Shown piece after piece: positions 48,780 to 64,000 of a DNA stretch of 64,000 nt. Position numbers and translations under genes: made by a program. The notes under the pieces are model-generated. The model saw nothing but the letters and a program-made list of their open reading frames with translations, did no database searches and had not been told where the DNA came from. Source of the stretch: Hyphochytrium catenoides (Eukaryota > Protista > Hyphochytriomycota); the NCBI GenBank assembly GCA_900088475.1, contig FLMG01000116.1, positions 11,302-75,301 on the forward strand, read 5' to 3'. The first letter of the stretch is position 1; each line of letters starts with the position of its first letter.

Positions 48780-51758
48780 ATGGCACAACGTAAGGGAAGG
48801 GGAAAGGCGTCACATTCAAAGACAAAGCCCCCAATAACTTCTGGAGAAACGGAAAACTCCAACCAGTCAGTGCAACTGCCTTTGAACGGAGTAGTGGCAG
48901 TGGTAGATGTACGTCGCACGCTCAATCGCGCTCAGGATTTAGTCTATGCGTGGGTGGTGACTGAGTTATTTCAGGTCCATCTCGAACCTGGCATTGAAGC
49001 AGCTGGAGCGATAAAGTCGAAGATGCTCGTCCTTGGGGCAAGGTAAAGGGATGCTCTTTATGCATAAGAATATGTACCTTTTCTTTACCCAGATGGATAT
49101 GTCTAATCAGGGTTGAGCCAAAATTATCCAACAATACCACGCATCTTGTGTGGGCCAAGGGAAGCCAACACACGTTAAATTCTGCTCTTAGCAAGAATAT
49201 TGCAGTGGTCAACCCACTCTGGGTTCAGACCTCAGAGATGGGCAGGGCAGATGAGGCGAGCTACTTTCCAAACGTTGGGACAGCGACCTATGTCAAGAGA
49301 AAAAGACCTTCAATGGAGCCTGGCGACAAGGATTGTCGAGAGCCCACTGATCCTTTCTACTCCTCCTCCCAGCGAGACTTTAATGATGGACCTTCTAACA
49401 CAAACCACTCCAAGTTGAAGAGAGCGAAGAAGGGAGACCCATCACCCACCACCCTACCCTTGCTCGATCGGACGAACTTAAGTGACGGCAATAAAGGCTA
49501 CAAGGTAACTACTTCCATAACAAGCTGATTCTTGAATCTAATAAGACGCCACATTGGTTGCTTCGCAGGAACTGGAGAGCAGTGACGCTGAGAGCAGGAC
49601 CACAAAGCAAATGGACGAAGCTAAGTCAGGTCAATTGGCGTATCCGAGAACGTACTTTCGAGACGGTGCTAACGTTAGGTGCAGATGGTACATCCCACAA
49701 TTCTTTTCTAGCTGTTTCGTCAGAGGCCTCCACTGAGATGCAGGTAGGCGTGCGTATCTTGGCCTGAATGGCATTGTTTTTAACTGGAATGGCCAGGGTG
49801 TCAGCGGTTCTAGAACAAGCGCGAATGGATGGGCTTGTTCAACGTGTACTTTTGAAAACCAAAGAAGCTCTCGGAAATGCAGATTATGTGGCACTCCACG
49901 GGAAACTCTAACATTGAAAGAGGCCCTTCCATCGCGAGAGACGTCTACTAGAAGAGCAAGGACAGCTGGTGATAAGGTGACCGAGAACAGCGTGACGTTG
50001 ATAATCCAGTCTGGCTCTTCCGGAAGCACCCAGAAAGAACACGCCGAAGTTTTTCTAGATACAACCAATTATATAAAGGGGAAAAGGACTAAGGATGGTA
50101 GAGTTCAGAAGAAGGGGGACAAACGACGGGAGACAGTTCCTGGACCGGGGGATGATGAAAAGCAGTTGCATAGCAGCAAGCCTCCCCAATCAGATATCGT
50201 GCAGGCAAAAGAGTTAATCAGCCCCAGCGACCCACAACTAGTCTCATATGCGCTCGATTCCCATTGCAAGCCGCTCGAGAGGCCAGGTAAGGCTAGGGCG
50301 AGGCGGATCAAAATGACGCATTCACGTGGTAAAGCTGCGATGATTGAGAATCCAACGAATGAGGCAGAAGCAAACTCTAGGCTTCAGTCTGAGAATCCGG
50401 ATGAACAGGCTGACCAGGACAAGTCACCTGAAAGTATCACCAGCGATGCCTCTAGCACTAGGCAGAAGACAATCGACGTTGGATCGACGTCGAGCGTTAC
50501 TACACATAAGGACGCAAGCCTTGCAAGGAATACTGTTCCATCGACCGTCACAGAGAAGGTGAATTTCAGCATCGGTGAATCGAACAAATCACATCCCGCT
50601 ACCCGGGCCAACTCTACCAAACGTCGGGTTACAAAAGGGCCTAGCCCGCCTAGCAATCATATGTTGGAAGTTGCTGCTGCCAAGGCTACTGGTCCTGACA
50701 ATAAGAAGGATGGAGCTTCTGACTGCATTGAAGTCCATGGCCGTACAAAGCTAACAGCAGCTAGCAACACATCCCTAATGAAGGGGACTTCTACCAAAGC
50801 TAGACAACCGAACACTGGAACTCCAATAACGACTTTCAGCAAAAGCAAAAATGATTCCAAGGCAAAGGGCAAGCGAGGCCCTCAGGAAGTATCAGGCGGC
50901 ACTGTCGTTCAAGGGACACAGATACCTCAGCCTGGTGGACCATTAGTGACAGTCGCGATCTCGGCGCTAGATGGAGAGGAAAGATCTTCGCTAGAAGCCA
51001 CTATGGAAACCCTGATGAACCGCGACTGCCGGCGTATTAGGTATCTGGCAGCGAATGCGAAGCCCTATGAAGGCTTCACGCATCTAGTATATGGCACCCC
51101 AAATAGCCGGACCTTGAAGCTTCTTTTCGCCTTGGCAAAGGGTGCAAAGGTGGTAAAGCCATCCTGGATTTATGCTTCTCTAGATGCCGAGAATCTAGTA
51201 GCAGAGGAGAGCCATCTCATGGATGAGTTCATTGGCAGAGACGGATGCTCTGCACTTTTGCAGGACTACTGCGTTTGCATCATAGCTGCGGTGGATCCTA
51301 GTATGAAGATCTTGACGAGATTAGTTAAAGCAGCGGGGGGTAAGGTGAGTGCTGATTGCCTAGTGTCTCGCTGTCCTGTTTCACTGAGTTGAGTCCCATG
51401 AGGTGGTCCGTAATGTCAAGCTAGCGAATGTCATTATTTCGGGCAAGAGGCTGCTCAGAGCTGCTTCTGTTACCAGCGTGAAGCAAGAGGTAAAGTACAC
51501 TAGTGTTCTAGTGCGCCGTAGAGGAGGAGTAGTCAGGGTAGCGGATGAAGCGTGAGGAGAGAAGACGAGGTCGCAGTAGGGAAGAGAGCTTGCTTGAGTG
51601 AGAGAAGACGAAAATATACTGGTAATGGCCGTCGCATTGCAGCTGACAAAATTGCTTTCGCTCGTTCCTTGTAGTGGCTCTTCGACAGCATCCAGAGAGG
51701 CGTGGTACAACCCTTAGAGCAATATGCGTGGCATTCAGTAAAGAATAAAAGGTCTTAA
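48780..51758 (+). CDS. Microcephalin (MCPH1)-like protein: N-terminal BRCT, central disordered region with a RanBP2/NZF zinc finger, C-terminal tandem BRCT
   Basis: LNGVVAVVDV...MLVLGARVEPKLSNNTTHLVWAKG...VVNPLWV...ADEASYF followed by KRKRPSMEP (cf. MCPH1 KKRKCMQP); WACSTCTFENQRSSRKCRLCGTPR; FTHLV...RTLKLLFALAKGAKVVKPSWIYASL; LVKAAGGK...WLFDSI. The start codon is tentative. Confidence 0.8.
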
Positions 51759-51774: not shown

Positions 51775-54700
51775 TCAAAATCTTACTGTAGCTAAATCAG
51801 GCCGTGCACGGTTGCACATTTCGCAATAAAACTGAGAGTCCGCGTTGAAGTAAGTACATCCACCTTGCTCAGAGGCACAAATCCACTTTCCCGGTGGCAC
51901 CTCCCTCTTCCCAGTCCATCCGAGGTCACACATTGCACATATTTTGTCCTCAATAGAGTTTACAAAGGTGCAGTTGTTGCATCTCCATGTCTGTGGCTTG
52001 GCTTCTTCGGAAGGACGCTCGCCTTGCGCATATGGATTCCTGGCCTGACAAATGGCACAAGCCGCCGATTCTCCAGCGTTCAGATAAGTGCACGCCTCAC
52101 ATACCCATTCAGAGGGCAAATCAATTTCCCCGCCCCTGGGGCTCTCAGTCTTGACTTTCAAAATGACGAAAGTGGAGCTGAACTCCTCCCAGTCGATCAC
52201 ACTGTAACGAGTACAACGAAGGGGTTTAGTTAGGACTTCAATGCACTTAGAAGCGCAACTGACCAAGAGGTGTGGGGAAAGAGTTCACTTTAAGATCTTC
52301 CAAGGTGACTGCGAGCCATAGGGAGAACAGGAGGCCTGCGCTGTCAGGACATATAAACACGTACCCATCGCCCTTCTGGTCAGCCACGTGAATGACCTCA
52401 ATAATATCTCCTGCAGAGAAGCCAAGCTTCAGAGATTCGAATAGTCGCTGTGTCTCATCAAAAGTGAGTCTCCCGTCATTATCAAGGTCAAATGTCCTGA
52501 ACGTATCCTCCATGTCGAGCTTTTTGATCTTGATCTCGGAGTTAACCTTCAAATTGAAATCGTCAGAAAGGGATGCTTATATACCATGTCATTCCTTCAA
52601 AGGAGGGCCGCAAAGCAACTGGCCATCGTAACATAACCTTCTTTATCACTCGAACGTGGAGGTACTAATGCTGATTGCACCGTTTGGCCCCTCACCTGTT
52701 CCAGTTTGGCCCTAGCATGTAATAAGTGCCACTCTTCCTGCCTTGTGAAAATCTTGGCCAACGGTGTGTCTCCCCAAAGATGGCGCTCACGACGCCTTAG
52801 TCGCAGTGTCTCTCCAAAGAAGATCAGTCTGTACGGCGAGGAGATGGCGTTAATGCCAATCGTCAGCAAAAGACGATGGCCTCTTCCAGACTTGACGGCA
52901 GAGCGACGGAAGTAGAACGCACTTCGCGAAAAAGAAGGTATTCAAGCTGAAGACTTACCGATCAGGAAGAGACACATCCTTAAGTCCCTCCATCAATGCT
53001 TGCAGCTCATTATCCGTGTAATACATCTCTGCATTATAGAAACGCAGACACTGCAATCCTACTTCCAGTGCAGCTTCGGAGGCTTCCGTTGTTTCGTAGG
53101 CTTCAGAGCGGTCCAAGAGACGACCATCCAGCGTTTTGAGCGCGACTGCCGCGGCGGCTAGCACGGGTTGCTTTGAATGGATGACCCTTCGTAAGGTCTC
53201 AGCTTCGGCCAACGAAATCGCCACAACGAATCTAACTGCACTATCGGCTTCGGCTTTAAGCTGGGTCTGAAACTCGGGGTCCATCACTGTCTGAAGGGCT
53301 TTGGCGGCGGCTGCGTTCGCTTCTAGGCCTTGCGCGATGAGGGAAGTGAATATAGCCGCTATATGAGTCTGTAATGACTTTTTCGTCGCTTGGGGCAGCC
53401 ACTCCATGACAATATTAACATTCTTAAGCCTGCGGTCACCAAGGCCGACCCAAGTCGGTCGGAAGAAGTTGTCCGATAGCAAAAGATACTCGGGAAAGTG
53501 GATCTGGACACTATCTGCACGAATTTTGAAGTCACTGAAGCGGTAAAACGCTTCTTCGCCACGCTTAAAGGATGGCAAACGGCTAAGAAGCGAGAGGTTC
53601 CAGGGATTGTGCTGTTCGTCATCGCGTGTGAAGGCCGATATCTTCTGCTCTTCTTGCTCAGCTTCCTGTTCAGCTTCTTGTTCCGCCTCAGCTTCATTCT
53701 CATGCACCACTTCTGCAGTCAACTGCATGCTCACGGTATCTCTAGTCTGAGATTCTGACACTTGTTGGACTAAGTGGACTACGTAGTTGACCCGCTGGTG
53801 CTCAAACTCCGATTGCGTAAAGTCTCTGTTATGCTCTACTAGCTCCCGGAGTTTATCTTTGAAGAAGGTGGGCTTGGGAATGTAGTCGGGCACAGGGTAC
53901 CCAATCTTTTCTCTAAATTGGCCGATCGCGCGTCGAAGGAGGGCGTGAGACGAGTCTTTACCCTCAAATCGACGGAGACGACTGTGGGCTGTGGTGCCGC
54001 TTTCTGTCGGGCCATTAGTATGCACTTCATCAATTAGCAGCCGAATAGCTCTCTTTCTCCAGACATTGTGAAGCTCTTGAAGAGAGAGTTGAATGAACTG
54101 TAGGCTCTCCATCCTCATACTGTTGACCAGTAGCCAAGCAGGCACGTCAATTTCGGCCATGGACGTGGCCCGCCCCTCCAGGTCCCTGGCCATCCTGTTC
54201 TTCACTTCGGGTATGATATACAGCTGGATGGTCTGCCCCTGTCCGATGCCCCTCATTCTATAAGCGCCTTGCGCATAGTCTCTGAAGGTCATGTCTTTCC
54301 CTATGGTCAACACTGCTCGAGCATTTGGCCATTGCTTGATGTCCATTCCGGTGGTGTGGACTTGGTCGTAGAAGGTAAACCGTTTCTCTGGATCTATTCC
54401 ACACTGCATAAGGTTGATGGACTTTCCAGTGTTACGGAGAAGGATCATCTTTCGGTCCAATCGGTCTAGGTACACCACACCTTCGAACGTGTGGGGAAGG
54501 TGCTCAAGCAGAAAGTGCGCAACTTCTTCATTGTCCATCCCTGTAATCAGTGCCCCCGTATCGATCAAAGCGTGAACTGCAGGGCTGGAACGTGCCACAT
54601 CCATTAGCAAGGTCTTCGCGGTCCAATCAGACTTAAAGATAGCGGAAGTGACTGATGGCGAAGTGAGAACATTGATAATTCTGCCGTCGCTGCCAGGCTC

Positions 54701-57700
54701 GTAGAGACACTCCCCCAAATCTACAGGGAGAAGATTCGACGGTGTTCCTGAGAACCCAATGCGTGATTGGAAGAGGATATCACTACCTAGCTCGTGACCA
54801 GATGCGCTGATCTTGAGATTTTGAAAGTTCATGCAGGCCGGAAAGACGTGTTGTCGCAAGTAATAATGGACCACCTCCGGAACCTTTCTGACAAGAATGA
54901 AGAGCTGGCTGAGCTGCTTCGGATCGTTAGGCTGAAACAGGGGGAGAGGCAGTACTGGGATGGCCTCTCTCTTCCCTGCCCGCCTGCTGGACTTTGCCAT
55001 CCCAAGGAGGAGCCATCTCTTGAAAAGAATGCTCGCTGGTCGCTGGTCCCTTGGCCCAACCTGCCGACTGTAATCCTGCTTCAGCTGCTGGATTAGCCGC
55101 TTCAGGTCGGATATCCTCAGACCTTCGTAGCGATAGGCTAACACGGTGAGACCAATTACCACGTCCGGATGAGCGAACTCGGAGGATCGGCTAGGCACAT
55201 CTTTTCCGACAAATGGCACAGCCATCAACCGGCGACTTAACGGAGCTTTTGGGTCTATCATTGTAAGATCTGCAGGGCTGAGTATGCCATAGGAAACGCG
55301 ATCTATTTTCGAGAGGACATGGGGAAGCAAGGTCATAATCCAGTCTCGACAAAGATTTAGCAGTTTTTTGCTCTCTTGCAGAAGTCCATCCTCTATCTCC
55401 GCTTTCTTGATGTCATCCACTTCCTCCCTCGTCAGATACTCTAGCAGAAGCTCGTCAGAGACCTTGCAAGTACCAACAAAGTGATCATGGAGCCAAAGAA
55501 GGGCCCATCCCGCAATTAAAGGCTTCAACCGTTGATGATAAAAATCAAGATCCAAAAGCACCAAGTGCGGGATACGTTGCATAGCGTGACCCTCATAACC
55601 CTCCTTCAGGGTCTGGTCAAGGGCTTTTACGATCCCAGATGCGGCTTCCACTGACCGCCTGCTCTCTTCCGACGTCACAACGTGCGACTTACTCCTCGTT
55701 CCTTCCGCTCCCGTACCAGGAATAGGCTCCGTCAGCTCGCCATGGCCCAAGTGGAATATGGCATCTAGAATAAAAATGGGAAGGTCCCACCTTGGCCCGG
55801 CCAAGTCAATAGGAAACTTATTGCCAATCGGGAAATTGAGCTCAGAACGAAGCGGGTGAAGTAGAACATCAACTTCATCCATGATAAGAACCCCTTGCCT
55901 CCAGATATCCAAGATGCGCACCAGGGCATCTGCCATATCTGAGCGAGACGTCATGACATCCCTTAGTCTTGCCACTTCCTTGTTGTGTCTCACGGATGTG
56001 GTTGGGACCAGGGAAGCAAAATCCACTTGCTCTATCGAATGAAGCTGTTCAATGAATTTGAGCACTAAGCTCTTGATAGCCTCAGGTGGGGCGCAGACGA
56101 CGTCCCCTCGCCTTCTAGCGCTGTCCAACTTAGCATATAGCTTCGCCACAACCTCTACGCTATCCTCACATGAACGATCAAAGACTAAGGTGTAGACCCT
56201 CTTGGTCACAATCGAGCTAAACCGCGATCGTAGAATGTTACGAGTTTGCTCAAGGAGCGCTGTCGGCATGACTTGTGTTACGAGCGAGCGACGGTCAGCC
56301 AAAATGAGCGTGAGCAGTGGACCGACCACAGTTGTCTTCCCATACCCCATAATCATTTGCTGCACCATTGATTTGCCTGTCTTTGCACTGTCGACGAAGG
56401 AGTTGACCATCTCCACTTGTCGCTCTCGCAGCTGGATTTCAAAGATGTACTCGAAGACCAGGAAGCGAGGATCGTAAGTAGCGGACCGAGCGGATGAAGA
56501 GATGGAAATCAATGCGGTTTCCTGGTCCTTGTATTGAGTATAGTGCCTGACCGTCCCAAGCACTTGCGCTAGCTCTATCGAGGAGTGAGTCACCCTGTTT
56601 ACCAAGGAAGCAAGCTGATGAGGCTCCCTAGCGCTGAAGAGCTGCAGCAATAGGGACTTAAGAGCCTTTGCTTTGGAAATAACGCCGCTAGCGTGGGTGA
56701 TTCTGTTGGTGTGGAGAATCAATGCTTGTGAGAGGAGAATAACTTTCTCTGCGCTGCCCACGTAAGGTGAGGAGGATAGAAGATCTTTTTCCAATCGAGA
56801 AGAGAGAAGAAGAGCAATAAGATAGCTCACGCCAACCACTTGTCGCTGTCGTCCAAGCCTCTGCAAATAAAAAAGACACTTCTTCCGGGTCGAAGCAGGG
56901 TCTGCCCTTGCTTGACTAGCATTCGCGCCTGTTCCCTCTACATCCACCGTCTGGATCAACGTCCCGAGCTCATCCAAGCACCGATTGACGTGCTGGAAGT
57001 CTTTCTCCCGCAGCTTCTTTGTATCGTCAATGAGGTCATCTAGTAGTTGATTCGCGCCTGTGAAGACTCCATTTTGCGTAGTGAGAGCATGAAAAGAAGT
57101 GGAAGGCGAAGAGGAAAGCAACTGCAGGCACGAAGCTAAATCTTCGTCAGTAAAATAACGTAACCGGGGAAGAGGCCTAGCATTGGTGCTTTCTGCGTAA
57201 TCCTTGACGTCTTTGCTAAGCCTTCTTAGCAAGTCTTGGGCGACAGCTGTTTTTGATGCAGGGTGAGAATGGAGATCGAATGGTAGCACGTCCATAACTT
57301 CTTCCCGCTTCTGATCTAGCAGCACGTATTTATCCAGACCGATGCTACTCAGAGGCCGCGTAATAAACTCAGAGAGAGCAGCTGGAGATAGTTCTAGAAG
57401 CGGAGAGAAAGAGAAAGGCAAGAAAGGCCTCTCCTCGCAGCTGGTGTCTGAAGGGACCGCCGGTCTCTGGAGGCGTGCATCTGCTTCCCCTTTTATCTCA
57501 CTCACTCTCAAACTTCTAGAAAGCGGCTTCTCCTTCAACACTCTCCTNNNNNNNNNNNNNNNNNNNNNNNNNNNNNCTATCATTATCCACGGGAACGTCG
57601 GGCCAAGCTGCCTGCGGATGTCTCATCATACAGGCCAGTACGGCCATGGCTCGGGAGGGTACAGCTTCCTCCTCCCCCTCTCCTGCAGTCTCCTTCCCCC

Positions 57701-60700
57701 ACCGTGCAAGCTTCAGCTGGAAAACTCGAGTGAGAATCTCTCCAAATGAGCGATTGATTCTTCTTCCGTCGTATACAACATGGAGCTGCTGAAGGAGTAC
57801 TTCGTAGAGAAAGAGAAAACCTAATTGCTTGTTGGCTCCACTCTCTTCGTCGGCGGGAACATCATCAGACCAAAGAAGTTCGAGGCAATCCTCGTCCTTC
57901 AATAGCGTGCTGAGGCCCCCTGCTGAACCTCCTCCGCCTATCCCTCGCAATCCTCCTCGTCCACCTTCGTCCTCTTTAGGTCTTGGTGGCCGCTTGTATG
58001 TCAGACGGGTAAGATTGTGACCGTGTTCATCCAAGTACCTCTTCCCTAATGAAGTCAGCTTGTACCACGGCTGACCTCCAATCTTCGGGTGCTCTATGGG
58101 GAGGATGAGGTCCAGATCCTCGGCCCTCCGACGGCCATTCTCCTTGCTTCGGGCAGAAAGGAAGGCCATACGACACTTAATCGGCGTCGTGAACTGCTTG
58201 CAAAGATGGAGGGCATCTAACTCTTCTTCCCAGGTCAGTCTGCAGCCAGCTGAGACATGTGGGAGCTTGGCTAGATAGCCATGGGCCTCCTCGTGCACTT
58301 CCCACGGTGCCTTATTGTCTGAGTGCATAACGGCTAGTGAGAGCTTCAACCGGACAGCGTGAGCATCAGGATGAAGATCGTCGAGGGTCCGAGAGAGCTG
58401 GCCGAAGACCCAATTCTCCTCCTACAGAAGCATAAAGGGAATTATAAGAATTGTTATTTTGTCGTTAGCTGAGCTGTGAGCGGCAAAGGGAAGCAAACAC
58501 TGGTTGTACTTAGTTCGTGCACCCTCCTTGTTCAACGATAGCAAGATCTCATGAATGTCCAGAAAAAGCAACTCCTAGAGAGAACAAGTCCTAGAAAAAA
58601 CAGAGCGCATGTTAAGGTAAGGGTAGAATGCTTCCCACCTGAGTGAAAGGTACGTCAACGGTACAGCTATCGATCAGCGAAAATGCTGCTTCGTAATCTC
58701 TATGCAGAAATCGCAGCAGGATCAGGTACAGGGCCGACCCCAGAGTGTTCATCACGAGGAAGGTCCGAGATGTGTGCACAGGGTAGAGGTAGTACCGTGT
58801 CTCCATAACCTGCGTGAAAGGGACAGGGAAGGCTTGATGAAACGGATAGTATTACAGTGATAAACAACGCAGTTAGAGAAACGTAGATGGCTTCAAGAAG
58901 GTAAAAGCGCCAACCATCATCTATCGTCAGCTTAGCAAGCGTAGAGCTGGCTTGCAAGTAAATAGACTGGTACCAGCGCCAGTGATAATAACGAGTGACG
59001 AAGTTTGTATGCAATCATCCCTCCTTAGGACGAATCAGAGCAGCGTCTTACCTCCTGCCACCCTATGGAGCCTCTGTCGCTCACAACCTCGGCAGAAAAA
59101 GCGTTGCCTCTCACTCGTGGTCGGTAAAGATCATGATTAGCCACTAAAAGTTGCATGTCGCCATTAGTGCTCTCCAAGATCAAGGAGTTAGGGATCCCCT
59201 CTACTAGTCTTTGCAAGTAGGATGCACAGGGCGATGCTACTCCGGCCACAGTCGTGTCTGCTATCTTCCCTACTGGATCATGAACATACCAGCCGGCGTG
59301 ATCGGTGAGGAAGAGGTGTACTTTTCCCTCAGCGTCTCTTTGTGGCTGAAACTTAAGCTTCAGACGTGGAAGCTCAATCATTGCAATTTGACAAAGAGAA
59401 GATATATCAACTTCCATTTTGCTCTCCTCTCTTCCTCTCTCATCCGAGCCCTCTCTCTCGCCAATTACCGCCTTCGCTGTATCAGTGATGTTAGAGCTGC
59501 TTGTCCATACTAAAATATGGGAAAGATTCTCCAGGCGTGAAAGTGTACTGGCCATGCGAAAAAGAAGAGAGTGAGAGGGTGCATTGAACAGGTCCAGGAG
59601 CACCAAATCACCTCCAACATGTGCGCTACTTGAGGCCGGACGAGGAGACACACCTCCAGACGCTGTCCGTTCGTCTGTAAATAGAGCAGCTGCAGGTCTC
59701 GCACCCTGGTCCTCTACCTCCATTGCGTCCGAAGAAGCAGCCGGCTGCACTCCCTTTCTCTGATCCTCATAGGAGCGAATCTCTCCCTCATTGGTAGGGT
59801 CAGATAGCCAAGCTCGAGCCAGGTTCACGTCGTCTCCAAAGAGCTCAAGAGCGTAGTCCAATGCATGGTCCGAGAGCGAAGGAAGAGAGAGCTTTAGCTC
59901 AGAGATAAACTGCATACGGGTCAGTGAACGAGAAAGAGAGGCCTCTCCCTCCTTGATTACTGCGTCAACCTCGTCTCCCGCCATTGCTTCTGCAAGAGCT
60001 ATCTCATCCTGATTCTCCTCGTCAAGGAGCCACTGTGCGGCGAGGGCTACAGAGTTACCGCACTTCTTGAGCGCTAGTTTGCAAGCAGCGGGATCAAAGC
60101 CCAACGCTACAAGCTCCAATATCGCTTCTTCTGAAGGCAGAGAGGAATGGGACGCCTGCTGATGTGCCTTTGATGTCTGCCGGACAAGCGGCGGTGCAGC
60201 GGCTAGGATCTCCTTAGGATTCTTAACTTTGGAATGCTCCGCTGCAAGAGGCCTCCGAACGACTATCGCGCTAACCCTAGCTTCTCCGTCTATGCCGTTG
60301 TCTTTCCTTTTCTTGCTCCCTGGGAGAAAAATCTCTATGTTATAGCCGAACCACTGATCGTTAGCATCCACAGGCCAGCCCCGAAGGATGTCATCCTCGC
60401 CTATCCAAATCTCAAAGGCTTCCAGGAGTGCGGATGGGATGAGTCCTTGTAAAAGACGGGGAGGTAGGTAAGTCTCTGTTCCTCCTATACTCTGGTTCTT
60501 TCGGACTATGACGAGGGACGAGTCCACATCTCTCCTCTTCTTCCAGTCTCCGGCAGAAAATGTCACTCCTGCCTCCAGACTGATGCCCAGGCGATCAAAG
60601 TTGGGGGAGAGAGAGTGAAGAGGAAAGCGAGAGTCAGAGGAAAAGACCAATTGGCGGTACATTTTCCTACCATGGCTCACTAGGTTGAAGACCAGAACCA

Positions 60701-63700
60701 ATGACCTATCTCTCTCCACTAGGATCTCCTTCCATGTTGATGGGAACAGCTGATTCCCGAAATCATCCTTCTCTGCCTTCTCTAGGCCTATTAACCGGCA
60801 ACGTCGTGCCGCGGAGGTTAGCTTCTGCTCAGGGAACAGAAGGGGATATTGCAGTTTGTTTTCTGGAGGAAGGGGAGGGAACTCCGCATACACCACGGGC
60901 TTTAAAATGTTGATTACCCACTCCTCCTCAACTTCTCCCCAGGGTTCGTCTCCATAAGGATCCCAGACACGCGAGTAGACTTCTCCATCGTACGAGTACG
61001 AAGGAGGATTCTCTGCCTCCTGCTGCGGGGCAACAGCGCCCCGAGGGGTGCCGCACATCTCACAAGTTGTTCCTCCATTAGCATTGTAGAAAGTGCAAGC
61101 AAGGCACTGCCAGAAGGCCTGGCTCATGTTCGCCGAGCTACTCGAAGACGAAGAGAGAGAAGAGCGCGGTTGCCCTATTCCTTGATCCTCATCCTCAGGC
61201 TCATCCCACTCCTGAATATCACAATCGGTCCCTACTACATGGATCCACAGCCGGTGCCTCTGCCTGGCGACTAGACCACAATGTAGAGGCTCTCTACCAA
61301 AAATAGTCTCATAGTCGGCGAACTGGACGACAGAGTCTGGGACAGGCTTCAGCTCATCATTCCGCCATAGAACTTCAGCACACTGCACATCCACCTAGCA
61401 AGGAACGAAAGATCACAATGTAAGACTAGAAATGGCTGTAGCCACCAAGCATATAGGTAAGATTAGGAAGAGGATAAAGGCAACTTCGCTACATTCGTAA
61501 AACGCAGTCATAGACTCTAAGACAGTTGTTGCTGAGAAGCACGGAGCTAGGAAGTTACAGCCTACCTTCAAGTCAGTCTTCTCTGCCCAGTAACGGCCAG
61601 GGACTCCTCCAGTGGCCCTCGTCCATCCGGAGTAGACGAACTGCGGCGTCTTCAGCGCGGTTTTCACCACTTCTGTCAACAAGTTGTCCAGGGCCGCCCG
61701 GTTGGAGCTCTCCAAATGCTCCAAGAACTGGACCACTTGCCTACGTTGTCTTTGGAGCATCTCAAATAGTGAGGATTCAGGCACCTCTACTGGAGGATAT
61801 CTCTTGCCTTCTTGTGGTGCACAGAATGATGGCGCACGAATAGTCTCACCTCCTACCTATACTCCATTGTAGGTTCAAGAAGAGGATTCAAGTTAAGGCA
61901 AGATGACACTAGTCAGCATTCTAGACGAAAGAGCGGTCTTGCTGAGAAGATGGACAGTTGAGGTCAAGCAAACAAAGATGATAACAGCTAGAGACGAATT
62001 GGACGTAGGCGACGAAGGGTTAAGGTGTGAGCTACTTGTGCAAGGCAGGGAATCAGATGTACCTGCAGGAAGAGAGGCCTCCCTCTTAAATACTTGTCCA
62101 ATGAGCCAGGCGCGATGTTATCAGTCTTAATACCTTGTGACTGCATCCAACGGACAAGCCTCTGCTCAGGGGTGAGACCATTTTCCCTCAAAGGCAGCGC
62201 CGTTTGTCCAAAGGCGTGCCAGTTGCGCACATATGCGAGTGATCCCAACATGCGGACCAAGACCTCTTCAGTGAGCTCTGAATAGCGCGCGTTCTTCCAT
62301 ATAAGTGCAAGGTAGGAATGAATAACGCAAGCAGTGGTGATATCCTCAGCCACCTCAGCTTCTCCTTTCCACCTATTGAGGCAATCAGCTGCAAAGCCAT
62401 GAAGGAATGCCCTTAGCCTTGCCAGGTAAGAACTAAGGAGGTCTTCCTGCTGCTTGGAAGGAGTGAGAGAAGGAGGAAGGGCGAGAGAGCCCTCTGAGCT
62501 ATCAATCAGCTGAACCACATAGGTTTCTACATCTACCGCTAGGCCAATCATATAGATTATGAAAGCAGCATCAGGTGAATGAACCGGAGCTTCTCCAAGT
62601 TCTTTGACACTGTTGAACATTTCAATTAGTGGATCCATCGTGGCGCCAGGAGAGAAAAGTAGCTCATTCAGGAGCAGGCCATATGGAGATCCTAATTGCT
62701 CTGTTTGCTCTGGAACGCGGGCGTCTAGGAGTCTTTCCAGTGCTTTCTCCCGCCTTTGGGTTACCGTAAGTCGCACTGGTACCTCTCCAATCGTCTCTGG
62801 GCCTTTACGAAGGGGCACCCAAGGCCCGGGCTCAAACAGCACAGCTCTTAGCAGCTGTTGCAGCTCAGAGTTGAACAAATAGGTGACCCTATCTCTTGAG
62901 GCAAAAAACCCAACGATTAGGGGGAGACGTGCATAGGGCACAGTAAGGTAGGAGAGAAGGCATTCTGCCTCCTCGACGCTTAAGGTCCCCTCAAATGTCG
63001 GAAGGCTCTCCGCATGCATCACATCGTCTTCTGTAGGGTACGGCAGACCCAAAATTCTGCCGATATCTGACGGACTCACAGTTACTGGGCCTTCGCCGAA
63101 GAACAATCGTCTGCCCTTGAATCCATACACTTCTACATCAGCAATGTCAAGATCTAAGCCTCTAAAATTGACCACTTCCCAACGAAGAGGGGTGTCTGGC
63201 CGGTAGCTAGCGCCAAAACGCCGGAAAGCCGTGTTCTCGTCGAACGATAGCTGCCAGCTTTGCCATTGCTTCGGAGCCAGTCTTCGCCTCATGAGCTCGC
63301 TCTCTCTGCTTTCCATTGTCGAGAGGAATTTGTAGATTGCTATCATGTCCCGGAGCATTCCAAACTCTGGATGTTCCTGCTGCAGTTTTGTTCCCTCTCC
63401 AAACATCCAGTTCATTAACGCTTCCATTTCGGTAGGAGGATTAGGATTGTTCGGCGGGAAGAGAGGGTAGCCAGCCCTCTCCATCAGTCTTCTCAGAAAG
63501 CCGACAGTGCTGCTGTACTTCCTAATTTCAACTCTGTCCTCTGGCATTCGATAGTCGAAGAGTGTGTGGGAACATGTTGCTTGTAGCGCCTGGATGTATT
63601 GCAGTACCGAGTACATACGAAGGTTCAGCTGCGGTCTCGCAGTTTCAAGGTAAGTGGCCACTGCTTCGTATGGGCGATTGTCCTATAGAAATACGGCAGA

Positions 63701-64000
63701 ACGGGAAGAGATAGCGCGATTAGAACTCAGTCTTAGCGTCGAGAGGTGCAAGGACGAGGAGAGCGGTTGAACTCGAGGAGAACCGCGTTTAATTTTTGAC
63801 GGAGCTATCTAGCTATCAACAATAAGTACGGACAAACAATGAGCAGAAGCGCAACGTAGACTTCAGCTGTAGTGCTCTCCACGGATAAATAAAACCACTA
63901 TTATCTCTTCCTCTCGCGATCTTTTAGCTGCCAAGACGTCCTTCCCTTGCGCTTGCTTACCTGGCAAAGGTTAAAGGCTACGCAATAGCCTCCGTTGTCA
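51775..64000 (-). CDS. Giant DUF3638/DUF3645-type SF2 P-loop ATPase with NZF x4, UBA/CUE x2 and an EF-hand pair; 5' end beyond the window (>3,500 aa in window)
   Basis: YDPRFLVFEY.FEIQLRERQ, QMIMGYGKTT, LIMDEVDVLLHPL.SELNF, MAVPFVGKDVPSRSSEFAHPDV (DUF3645-like), GFSGT, ALIDTGALITG, FYDQVHTTGMDIK, AQGAYRMRG. ORFs 61988-63661, 61413-61784, 59025-61394, 58612-58806, 57516-58349, 52955-57583, 52597-52869, 52247-52552 and 51775-52266 are exons of one gene. A further exon runs from 63961 to beyond 64000. Confidence 0.85.
57548..57576. other. Assembly gap (29 N) inside the giant ATPase CDS; explains the apparent frame change
   Basis: Run of N; the flanking ORFs are in different frames. Confidence 0.99.

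What the first reader, a model, noticed from the sequence alone, without database searches (positions are those of the whole stretch)
51775..61120. Six ubiquitin-reader modules and an EF-hand pair bracket that motor: candidate Ca2+-gated, ubiquitin-directed segregase
Seen, N-terminal to the motor: NZF WQCLACTFYN...CEMCG (~61020-61113), UBA ELVALGF....KLAL...NSVALAAQWL (~60020-60135) and a CUE/UBA-like helix bundle (~59800-59910). C-terminal to it: EF loops DLDNDGRLTFDE and DQKGDGVIDWEE, plus three more NZFs (CTYLN..CAIC, CTFVN..CAMC, CTYFN..CEMC). Established: the T-F/Y...hydrophobic signature marks ubiquitin-binding NZFs (Npl4, TAB2, TRABID), and tandem NZFs read chain linkage. Inference: a one-chain analogue of p97-Npl4 built on a different motor, possibly for proteostasis or cell-autonomous defence.
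Basis: partly seen in the sequence, partly recalled or inferred. Interest (0 to 1): 0.75.

Follow-up and report, generated by a model that had tools for sequence, protein, structure and literature searches.

The report
Giant SecA-like ATPase with ubiquitin readers
One protist gene of roughly 4,200 codons really does flank a SecA-like ATP motor with ubiquitin-binding-type zinc fingers, UBA-type bundles and an EF-hand pair, but it belongs to an ancient, widespread and unstudied protein family (DUF3638/DUF3645), so its role as a ubiquitin-guided protein-pulling machine is plausible and untested.

Summary
On the minus strand, 64000-51775 is one intron-containing gene. Its 5' end lies on another contig of the same assembly (C4220:2747-1).

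N-terminal to a DUF3638/DUF3645 ATPase it encodes an NZF-type finger, a Pfam-significant UBA, and a second three-helix bundle whose predicted fold matches CUE/UBA domains. C-terminal to the ATPase are an EF-hand pair (loop 1 canonical, loop 2 degenerate and split by a GT-AG intron) and three more fingers with the Thr-Phe/Tyr plus hydrophobic signature.

The N gap cannot be shown to be in frame. Both flanks are coding and colinear with relatives, and about 40-50 residues seem hidden.

No DUB or E3 domain was found. The recovered 5' part holds a tryparedoxin-like WCKPC domain. Relatives add Ubl and AZUL modules, which ties the family to the ubiquitin system.

The "segregase" and "Ca2+-gated" readings remain inference. 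This is a new member of a known, uncharacterised family.

The parts
63961..64000 (-). Partial exon at the contig end. The gene continues 5' on G000 contig C4220:2747-1 (minus strand), outside the window.
   Evidence: It encodes a DNGGY.. motif matching the family consensus DGGY. A GT donor follows at 63960. Homologues align colinearly to C4220:2765-4.
62063..63682 (-). Exon of about 540 codons. Strongly conserved (about 47% identity to relatives), with no known domain.
   Evidence: tblastn colinearity. No Pfam hit at E<=1. No PDB hit with a 25-sequence profile. Splice sites.
61566..61856 (-). Exon of about 97 codons with no known domain.
   Evidence: tblastn. Donor AAG|GTAGG is in phase 0 with the acceptor at 61394. 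No Pfam hit.
59052..61394 (-). Exon of about 781 codons. In order it holds a beta-rich domain with NZF1 in a loop, UBA1, long helices, a second UBA/CUE-like bundle and an alpha/beta domain.
   Evidence: AlphaFold model md48a2a40d7b8, pLDDT 77. phmmer shows residues 1-76, 150-345 and 590-782 conserved family-wide, while the ubiquitin modules sit in variable linkers.
61053..61112 (-). NZF1, a RanBP2/Npl4-type zinc finger with a TF motif and CEMC.
   Evidence: PF00641 at 28.2 bits alone and 22.6 bits within the ORF. Present in the consensus of the six closest orthologues.
60018..60131 (-). UBA domain with an LGF loop.
   Evidence: PF00627 39 bits; PF22562 28.8 bits. The model matches Mud1 UBA (rmsd 0.4 over 35 residues), Ddi1 UBA-ubiquitin and Rad23 UBA.
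59757..59963 (-). Second three-helix bundle, CUE/UBA-like.
58639..58809 (-). Exon of 57 codons.
   Evidence: tblastn at 47-61% identity. GT/AG sites in phase.
57577..58421 (-). Coding stretch upstream of the assembly gap, ending ..WPDVPVDND.
   Evidence: Open frame aligned to homologues.
57548..57576 (.). Assembly gap (N run). It probably hides about 120-160 bases of coding sequence.
   Evidence: The flanks are out of frame at the nominal length. Homologues have 73-87 residues between the anchors against 34 plus the gap here.
52959..57547 (-). Large exon of 1,529 codons: a pre-motor region, the SecA-like SF2 ATPase and its helical C-terminal scaffold.
   Evidence: Open frame. 8,547 family clusters at E<=1e-3.
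53378..56485 (-). Modelled motor. RecA1 is split by an insertion of about 370 residues between motifs II and III. RecA2 follows, then a long helix and a helical domain.
55757..56479 (-). Pfam DUF3638, including Walker A (GYGKTT, 56330-56350) and Walker B (DEVD, 55868-55882).
   Evidence: PF12340 109.8 bits. Motif coordinates.
55145..55240 (-). Pfam DUF3645, a near-invariant AVPF.GKDVPS..SEFAHPD motif inside the inserted domain.
   Evidence: PF12359 57.9 bits. Invariant columns. It lies in a low-confidence loop of the model, residues 426-437.
54242..54757 (-). Helicase motifs III (GFSGTP, 54740-54757), V (HTTGMDI, 54338-54358) and VI (QGAYRMRGIG, 54242-54271).
   Evidence: Sequence. Invariant in 11 full-length relatives.
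52696..52828 (-). Exon of about 44 codons with a conserved RRRERHLWGDTP.AK.FT motif.
   Evidence: tblastn at 52-70% identity. Splice phases.
52365..52546 (-). Exon holding EF-hand 1 (loop at 52454-52489) and the first half of EF loop 2 (52365-52381).
   Evidence: Pfam EF-hand_5 32.6 bits and EF-hand_7 29.9 bits against a cut-off of 30. The orthologue profile hits calmodulin at E 1.5e-6.
51775..52201 (-). Last exon: the second half of EF loop 2 (52183-52200), fingers A (52048-52107), B (51928-51987) and C (51814-51885), and the stop codon at 51775-51777.
   Evidence: PF00641 at 27.4, 17.4 and 15.9 bits. Tail and stop position are shared with relatives ending ..ARP[DN]LA[ST][VI]RF.

Best explanation
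This is one gene of about 4,200 codons. It is the single copy in this stramenopile genome of an ancient eukaryotic giant protein of the DUF3638/DUF3645 family.

Its core is an intact SF2 ATPase built like SecA. A large domain is inserted between helicase motifs II and III, where SecA carries its preprotein-binding domain, and a long helical scaffold follows the second RecA domain.

The core is surrounded by modules of ubiquitin-binding type. Upstream are one NZF, one UBA and one CUE/UBA-like bundle. A conserved tail carries an EF-hand pair and three NZF-type fingers. A tryparedoxin-like WCKPC domain lies near the N-terminus.

Most likely mechanism (inferred): the UBA and NZF modules hold the protein on ubiquitylated clients or ubiquitin chains. 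ATP hydrolysis by the SecA-like motor then remodels, extracts or moves the client polypeptide. In relatives that carry an N-terminal Ubl or an AZUL domain, the client is probably delivered to the proteasome. Ca2+ binding at EF-hand 1 and the redox domain would be regulatory inputs.

Shown: the gene structure, the domains, their conservation and the predicted folds. Inferred: ubiquitin binding, the nature of the motor's substrate, and any calcium or redox control.
For: One gene:
- Relatives of 4,100-4,300 aa align colinearly from window 63682 to the shared stop at 51778, and to contig C4220 for the 5' end.
- P0001 and P0007 are single Trinity transcript ORFs from the euglenids Entosiphon and Flectonema. 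P0008 is an Albugo protein.
- A Leishmania tarentolae entry carries the motor plus three fingers in one predicted protein. Leishmania genes are essentially intron-free (general knowledge).

Domains: Pfam results.

Motor:
- Model pLDDT 85.8.
- Walker A, Walker B and motifs III and VI are invariant in 11 relatives.
- The insertion lies between motif II (aa 556-560) and motif III (aa 931-936).

Ubiquitin link:
- Of 131 fingers in 279 family proteins, 67 have T+[FYLM], 119 have a hydrophobic residue in the second CxxC, and none has the NF..R pattern I used (from memory) as a proxy for RNA-type fingers.
- The TF-motif definition of NZFs comes from PMC11372445.
- UBA and CUE fold matches.
- Partner domains in relatives: Ubl in 6 of 11 aligned relatives, UBA in 5 of 11 and RanBP fingers in 8 of 11, AZUL at 33.7 bits in P0151, and RING, WW and FYVE in others.

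Single copy in G000.
Against: - No experiment exists for any family member. Full-text searches for DUF3638 and DUF3645 found only gene-list mentions.
- The SecA resemblance is at the level of fold only. There is no Pfam SecA hit, the motor profile finds no SecA in the PDB, and hhalign against E. coli SecA gives probability 0.4%.
- Most SF2 ATPases act on nucleic acids.
- Fingers B and C and the second bundle fall below the Pfam thresholds.
- EF loop 2 has Lys at a coordinating position.
- This genome's copy lacks the Ubl and the AZUL domain that suggest proteasome docking in relatives.
- More than half of the protein has no assignable fold or function.
- The frame across the N gap and the junction between the two contigs are inferred.
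Confidence: 0.45

Rival explanations
1. The motor is a nucleic-acid translocase or helicase that ubiquitin-binding modules recruit to ubiquitylated chromatin, ribosomes or RNPs. ZRANB3 (SNF2 motor plus NZF), SMARCAD1 (SNF2 motor plus CUE) and ASCC3-ASCC2 (helicase plus CUE) work this way.
Against: SecA stands 4 Z units above every helicase, with 100-200 more aligned residues. The insertion between motifs II and III and the post-RecA2 long helix are SecA traits (SecA domain boundaries are from my own knowledge). No nucleic-acid-binding domain was found by Pfam in any exon.
Confidence: 0.2
2. The protein is itself a ubiquitin-system enzyme, a deubiquitinase or an atypical E3, with an unrecognised catalytic centre. 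The readers would then position chains for it. Candidate centres are the invariant DUF3645 loop or one of the unassigned conserved domains. UniRef's automatic name for relatives is 'ubiquitinyl hydrolase 1'.
For: UniRef names for the Albugo, Polarella, Leishmania, Durusdinium and Pseudictyota relatives. The invariant polar motif K-D-V-P-S..S-E-F-A-H-P-D lies in a flexible loop. Invariant Cys residues lie outside the motor, for example in the LHCG motif at 61269-61286. TRABID and CAPN15 are enzymes steered by NZFs (PMC11372445, PMC12805371).
Against: No DUB or E3 family was detected by Pfam in any exon or in 11 full-length relatives. A whole-protein orthologue profile against the PDB found only tryparedoxin and calmodulin among the 60 best of 377 matches; the rest were not shown. 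Fold searches of the two models found none. The UniRef name is automatic, and none of the searched papers gives experimental backing for it.
Confidence: 0.12
3. The small modules do not read ubiquitin here. RanBP2-type fingers and UBA-like bundles can bind other partners, such as Ran, exportin or FG-nucleoporins (as the TAP/Mex67 UBA does). The protein would then be a scaffold or motor in another pathway.
For: Mex67/TAP UBA-like domains are among the fold matches. Fingers B and C are below the Pfam cut-off. About half of the family's fingers lack T+[FYLM].
Against: All four fingers in this gene have the TF or TY motif plus the hydrophobic residue. Ubl, AZUL and RING co-occur in relatives. UBA1 passes the Pfam cut-off and has the LGF loop.
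Confidence: 0.1
4. The stretch holds two or more adjacent genes, and the single-chain architecture is an artefact of reading across them.
For: The N gap at 57548-57576 and the contig break at 64000 prevent a continuous reading. No transcript data for this organism were available.
Against: Full-length single-transcript ORFs in two euglenids and gene models in oomycetes and Bigelowiella have the same order of parts. Every junction has an in-phase GT-AG intron. There is no stop codon in either gap flank.
Confidence: 0.03

Closest known systems
DUF3638/DUF3645 giant proteins (Pfam PF12340 and PF12359), e.g. Albugo laibachii F0WWQ5, auto-named 'ubiquitinyl hydrolase 1'
   Same: Orthologous. They are colinear over the whole window, 40-60% identical in the motor, and share the tryparedoxin-like domain, the UBA, the EF pair, the finger tail and the C-terminal ..ARPDLA.VRF end.
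   Different: This copy lacks the N-terminal Ubl seen in about half of the relatives and the AZUL domain seen in some. It has an NZF1 insert that is clear only in the closest relatives.
SecA, the bacterial preprotein translocase ATPase
   Different: No sequence-level relationship is detectable. The inserted domain is about twice as long and mostly helical. This is a eukaryotic, apparently cytosolic protein with no SecY partner, and it is four to five times larger.
p97/Cdc48-Ufd1-Npl4 segregase
   Same: An ATPase combined with NZF and UBA-type ubiquitin readers.
   Different: p97 is a hexameric AAA+ ring that threads ubiquitin. This motor is an SF2 two-RecA ATPase, no AAA+ domain is present, and the readers are in the same chain.
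ZRANB3, SMARCAD1 and ASCC3-ASCC2 (SF2 motors steered by NZF or CUE domains)
   Same: An SF2 ATPase joined to NZF or CUE/UBA modules. SMARCAD1 CUE1 is the top fold match of the second bundle.
   Different: Those are SNF2 or Ski2-type nucleic-acid motors, whereas this motor matches SecA better than any of them. What those proteins do is from my own knowledge.
UBL-UBA shuttle factors (Rad23, Dsk2, Ddi1) and UBE3A AZUL-Rpn10 docking
   Same: Relatives combine an N-terminal Ubl, or an AZUL domain, with a UBA. That is the logic of factors bridging ubiquitylated clients and the proteasome. The Ddi1, Rad23 and Dsk2 UBA domains match UBA1.
   Different: The shuttles are small and have no motor. This genome's copy has neither a Ubl nor an AZUL domain.
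TRABID/ZRANB1 (three NZFs plus an OTU deubiquitinase)
   Same: A tandem array of three NZF-type fingers with TF motifs.
   Different: No OTU or other protease domain was detected. Here the fingers are C-terminal, follow an EF-hand pair, and the last one has C-x6-C spacing.

Membership tests
DUF3638/DUF3645 family (Pfam PF12340, PF12359) | Both Pfam models score above their gathering thresholds, in the right order. | tested here: met
   PF12340 109.8 bits (cut-off 31) at aa 357-597, and PF12359 57.9 bits (cut-off 25) at aa 770-801 of the motor exon.
DUF3638/DUF3645 family (Pfam PF12340, PF12359) | Full-length colinearity with family members beyond the Pfam regions. | tested here: met
   tblastn of five proteins of 3,961-4,293 aa covers window 63682-51778 and C4220:2765-4 in order.
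NZF (Npl4-type, ubiquitin-binding subgroup of RanBP2 zinc fingers) | [quoted passage not shown] | tested here: met
   NZF1, A and B fit W-x-C-x2-C-x3-N-x6-C-x2-C. Finger C has C-x6-C, so it does not meet the canonical spacing. Pfam scores are 28.2, 27.4, 17.4 and 15.9 bits against a cut-off of 27.
NZF (Npl4-type, ubiquitin-binding subgroup of RanBP2 zinc fingers) | A Thr-Phe/Tyr motif plus a hydrophobic residue in the second CxxC (definition in PMC11372445). | tested here: met
   TF with CEMC, TY with CAIC, TF with CAMC, and TY with CEMC.
NZF (Npl4-type, ubiquitin-binding subgroup of RanBP2 zinc fingers) | Binding to the I44 patch of ubiquitin. | not testable with these tools
   This needs pull-down, SPR or NMR with purified fingers.
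UBA domain | Pfam UBA above threshold and a three-helix bundle with a hydrophobic loop motif. | tested here: met
   PF00627 39 bits (cut-off 22.4). Helices at 422-430, 435-444 and 449-457 with an LGF loop. Mud1 UBA superposes at rmsd 0.4 A over 35 residues.
CUE/UBA-like domain (second bundle) | A sequence-family match, or the CUE MFP and di-Leu motifs. | tested here: inconclusive
   [not shown]
EF-hand pair | Two canonical 12-residue Ca2+-binding loops. | tested here: inconclusive
   Loop 1 (DLDNDGRLTFDE) is canonical, and the single-hand Pfam models pass (32.6 bits against 25.9). Loop 2 (DQKGDGVIDWEE) has Lys at position 3. The pair model EF-hand_7 scores 29.9 bits against a cut-off of 30. 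The orthologue profile hits calmodulin at E 1.5e-6.
SecA family | Sequence membership (Pfam SecA_DEAD, SecA_PP_bind, SecA_SW). | tested here: not met
   No SecA Pfam hit. The motor profile finds no SecA in the PDB by sequence. hhalign against E. coli SecA gives probability 0.4%.
SecA family | Architecture: a DEAD motor with a domain inserted between motifs II and III, and a helical scaffold after NBD2. | tested here: met
   [not shown]
AAA+ segregases (p97/Cdc48) | An AAA+ ATPase domain able to form a hexameric ring. | tested here: not met
   No AAA Pfam hit in any exon. The ATPase is an SF2 two-RecA fold.
Deubiquitinases ('ubiquitinyl hydrolase 1', as relatives are auto-named) | A recognisable DUB catalytic domain (USP, UCH, OTU, Josephin, MINDY, ZUP1, JAMM). 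| tested here: not met
   None was found by Pfam in all exons and in 11 relatives, among the 60 listed matches of the whole-protein profile against the PDB, or in the two fold searches. The N-terminal 330 aa, the 540-codon exon and the pre-motor region were not folded.
Tryparedoxin/nucleoredoxin-type thioredoxin fold (in the 5' part on contig C4220) | A Thioredoxin_8 match and a WCxPC active-site motif. | tested here: met
   PF13905 95.3 bits. The WCKPC motif appears in the translation. The orthologue profile hits tryparedoxin structures at E 2.8e-23.

The most novel reading that the evidence does not exclude
DUF3638/DUF3645 giants are a third, ancient class of ubiquitin-dependent protein-remodelling ATPase in eukaryotes. 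They would be cytosolic descendants or analogues of the SecA polypeptide translocase, would grip ubiquitylated clients through built-in UBA and NZF readers, would feed or extract the polypeptide with a monomeric SF2 motor, and would dock to the proteasome through Ubl or AZUL modules in many lineages. Calcium and thiol-redox state would act as inputs.
Probability: 0.15. Interest if true: 0.85.

Novelty: new member of a known kind. Interest (0 to 1): 0.55.

Why it matters
The family is very large: 8,547 clusters at 50% identity. It occurs in stramenopiles, alveolates, rhizarians, euglenozoans including trypanosomatid parasites, fungi and even rotifers, yet no function is published for any member. 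Public databases call many members 'ubiquitinyl hydrolase 1', a name for which no domain evidence was found here.

If a SecA-like motor is really coupled to ubiquitin readers, protein quality control in many eukaryotes would include a mechanoenzyme unrelated to the AAA+ machines on which the field is built. That enzyme appears to be missing from the standard animal and yeast models, although absence there was not tested. This gene adds no new architecture to the family, but its clean set of modules gives a concrete, testable hypothesis.

Tried and rejected
- ESM Atlas search with the 564-aa open frame 63682-61991 (which holds the 540-codon exon) gave no usable hit. With the motor it returned only the family itself and generic helicases.
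- phmmer of the motor against PDB sequences found nothing. The motor profile against the PDB gave only low-complexity poly-Q/E hits.
- hhalign of the motor alignment against E. coli SecA gave probability 0.4%. The SecA link therefore rests on predicted structure alone.
- A profile of the 540-codon exon against the PDB found nothing.
- The third homologue search, with the 789-aa exon, returned a single protein because the candidate list was saturated. Its alignment had to be built from whole proteins, and a first version was too large to fold.
- A search for a Ubl exon upstream of the start codon on C4220 found none.
- I considered an intron just downstream of the gap (GTGAGT at about 57495). 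I rejected it because the open frame there aligns to the homologues' ..RP.PSDTSC.. motif.
- I considered acceptor 52258 for the last intron. I rejected it because it would insert 19 residues into EF loop 2, unlike all homologues.
- Literature searches for DUF3638, DUF3645 and 'SecA-like' found no functional study.
All work on this gene was done exon by exon, by reference.

Full report
**Gene and assembly**

The window is eukaryotic DNA: contig C4216 of a 61-Mb assembly, positions 11302-75301. On the minus strand a series of long open frames runs from 64000 down to a stop at 51775-51777. The contig ends at window position 64000, so the 5' end is not in the window.

A search of the same genome for the thioredoxin-like domain that relatives carry near their N-terminus found it at the start of contig C4220. 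Five full-length relatives align colinearly to C4220:2765-4 on the minus strand, ending about 28 residues before the first exon of the window. The gene therefore spans two contigs, and its likely start codon is at C4220:2747.

Every search on this gene was made exon by exon, by reference.

**The gap**

With 29 N the two flanks are out of frame, because two bases of a codon are left before the N run. Both flanks are open and coding. The upstream flank ends ..WPDVPVDND and aligns to the homologues' WP..P.D motif. The downstream flank contains ..RPAVPSDTSC.., which aligns to their ..RP.PSDTSC...

Five homologues have 73-87 residues between these anchors, and the window has 34 plus the gap. About 40-50 residues (120-160 bases) are probably hidden. 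Continuity is inferred from colinearity, not read.

**One gene or several**

A search of 1.84 billion representative proteins with the motor found 8,547 clusters. The best hits are 3,900-4,300 aa long. By tblastn they cover the window in order from 63682 to 51778, ending at the same stop.

Two of them (P0001, 4,233 aa, Entosiphon sulcatum; P0007, 4,143 aa, Flectonema neradi) are ORFs of single Trinity transcripts. P0008 is an Albugo laibachii protein, and others come from Bigelowiella natans. A Leishmania tarentolae entry carries the motor and three terminal fingers in one predicted protein, and two further transcript ORFs carry the motor plus fingers. All exon junctions in the window have in-phase GT-AG introns. 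The segments belong to one gene.

**The reader modules**

- Pfam confirms DUF3638 and DUF3645, a UBA (39 bits), RanBP2-type fingers and an EF-hand.
- Scanned singly, the fingers score 28.2 (NZF1), 27.4, 17.4 and 15.9 bits against a cut-off of 27.
- All four have the Trp, the Asn, the Thr-Phe/Tyr motif and the hydrophobic residue in the second CxxC that define ubiquitin-binding NZFs (PMC11372445; coordinates).
- The last finger has an unusual C-x6-C with a GGC. It is nevertheless the best-conserved finger in the subfamily.
- EF loop 1 is canonical.

**The motor**

The ATPase motifs are present and invariant in relatives. About 370 residues are inserted between motifs II and III. From my own knowledge of its structure, that is where SecA carries its preprotein-binding domain. 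A long helix follows the second RecA domain. The near-invariant DUF3645 motif lies in a flexible loop of the inserted domain.

No sequence method links the motor to SecA, so this is a resemblance of fold and topology, not membership. It is not an AAA+ ring.

**The rest of the protein**

The 5' part holds a tryparedoxin-like domain with a WCKPC motif (95 bits; PDB profile E 2.8e-23). No DUB or E3 domain was found by Pfam in any exon or in 11 relatives, among the listed matches of the whole-protein profile against the PDB, or by the fold searches. The UniRef name 'ubiquitinyl hydrolase 1' borne by relatives is thus unsupported by any domain seen here.

More than half of the protein, including a confidently modelled beta-rich domain, has no assignable fold. 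These parts were only weakly tested.

**Family context**

The EF-plus-fingers tail recurs in dozens of relatives. Family proteins carry fingers mostly C-terminal to the motor (85 against 10), and none matches the NF..R pattern I used, from memory, as a proxy for RNA-binding RanBP2 fingers.

Relatives also carry an N-terminal Ubl (6 of 11 aligned) and a UBA (5 of 11). Some carry an AZUL domain, and others RING, WW or FYVE domains. Ubl and AZUL domains dock proteins to the proteasome in other systems (my own knowledge). This genome's copy has neither. The gene is single copy here.

**Verdict**

A ubiquitin-guided ATPase is the best reading, and the SecA-like fold makes a polypeptide substrate conceivable. 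Segregase activity, calcium gating and a defence role are conjecture. A nucleic-acid motor recruited by ubiquitin, as in ZRANB3 or SMARCAD1, remains a serious rival.

The gene is a new member of a known, widespread, uncharacterised family. The value lies in the hypothesis it sharpens for that family.

Noticed in passing
G000 contig C4220:1-2747 (L006), minus strand: The 5' third of the gene lies on another contig, so C4216 (high end) and C4220 (low end) are neighbours separated by roughly 85 coding bases or more. It encodes a conserved N-terminal domain (motifs PGGW, N.G.G..YH, SEY.R.EV.YDVLLPW) with no Pfam match, and a tryparedoxin-like domain with WCKPC.
   Followed up: partly
window 55163-55222 (-): The DUF3645 core motif AVPFVGKDVPSRSSEFAHPD is invariant across distant relatives, yet it sits in the only low-confidence loop of the inserted domain. 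It could be a binding or catalytic site.
   Followed up: no
window 51778-51885 (-): The terminal finger (W.C....GGC[TS].FN......[FY]YC..C) and the extreme C-terminus ..ARP[DN]LA[ST][VI]RF are conserved from oomycetes to Leishmania. The linker between fingers B and C (GW.G.R.VP.G.W) is conserved too, which suggests a fixed tandem unit.
   Followed up: partly
window 53645-53695 (-): A conserved acidic Glu/Ala/Gln repeat (EAEAEQEAEQ..) lies in a long predicted helix after the motor. It produced spurious poly-Q hits in the profile searches.
   Followed up: no
[not shown]
   Followed up: partly
relatives P0008, P0159, P0165, P0199, P0217: UniRef automatically names family members 'ubiquitinyl hydrolase 1', although no deubiquitinase domain is detectable. 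This is probably annotation carried over from finger-containing OTU enzymes.
   Followed up: partly
relative P0151, residues 1154-1196: A transcript-derived relative has an AZUL domain (the UBE3A-type proteasome-docking zinc module, 33.7 bits) inserted between the motor and the EF hands, at a position that is variable in this gene.
   Followed up: partly
window 49914-51392 (+): A 492-codon open frame lies on the opposite strand just downstream of the gene's 3' end. It was not examined.
   Followed up: no
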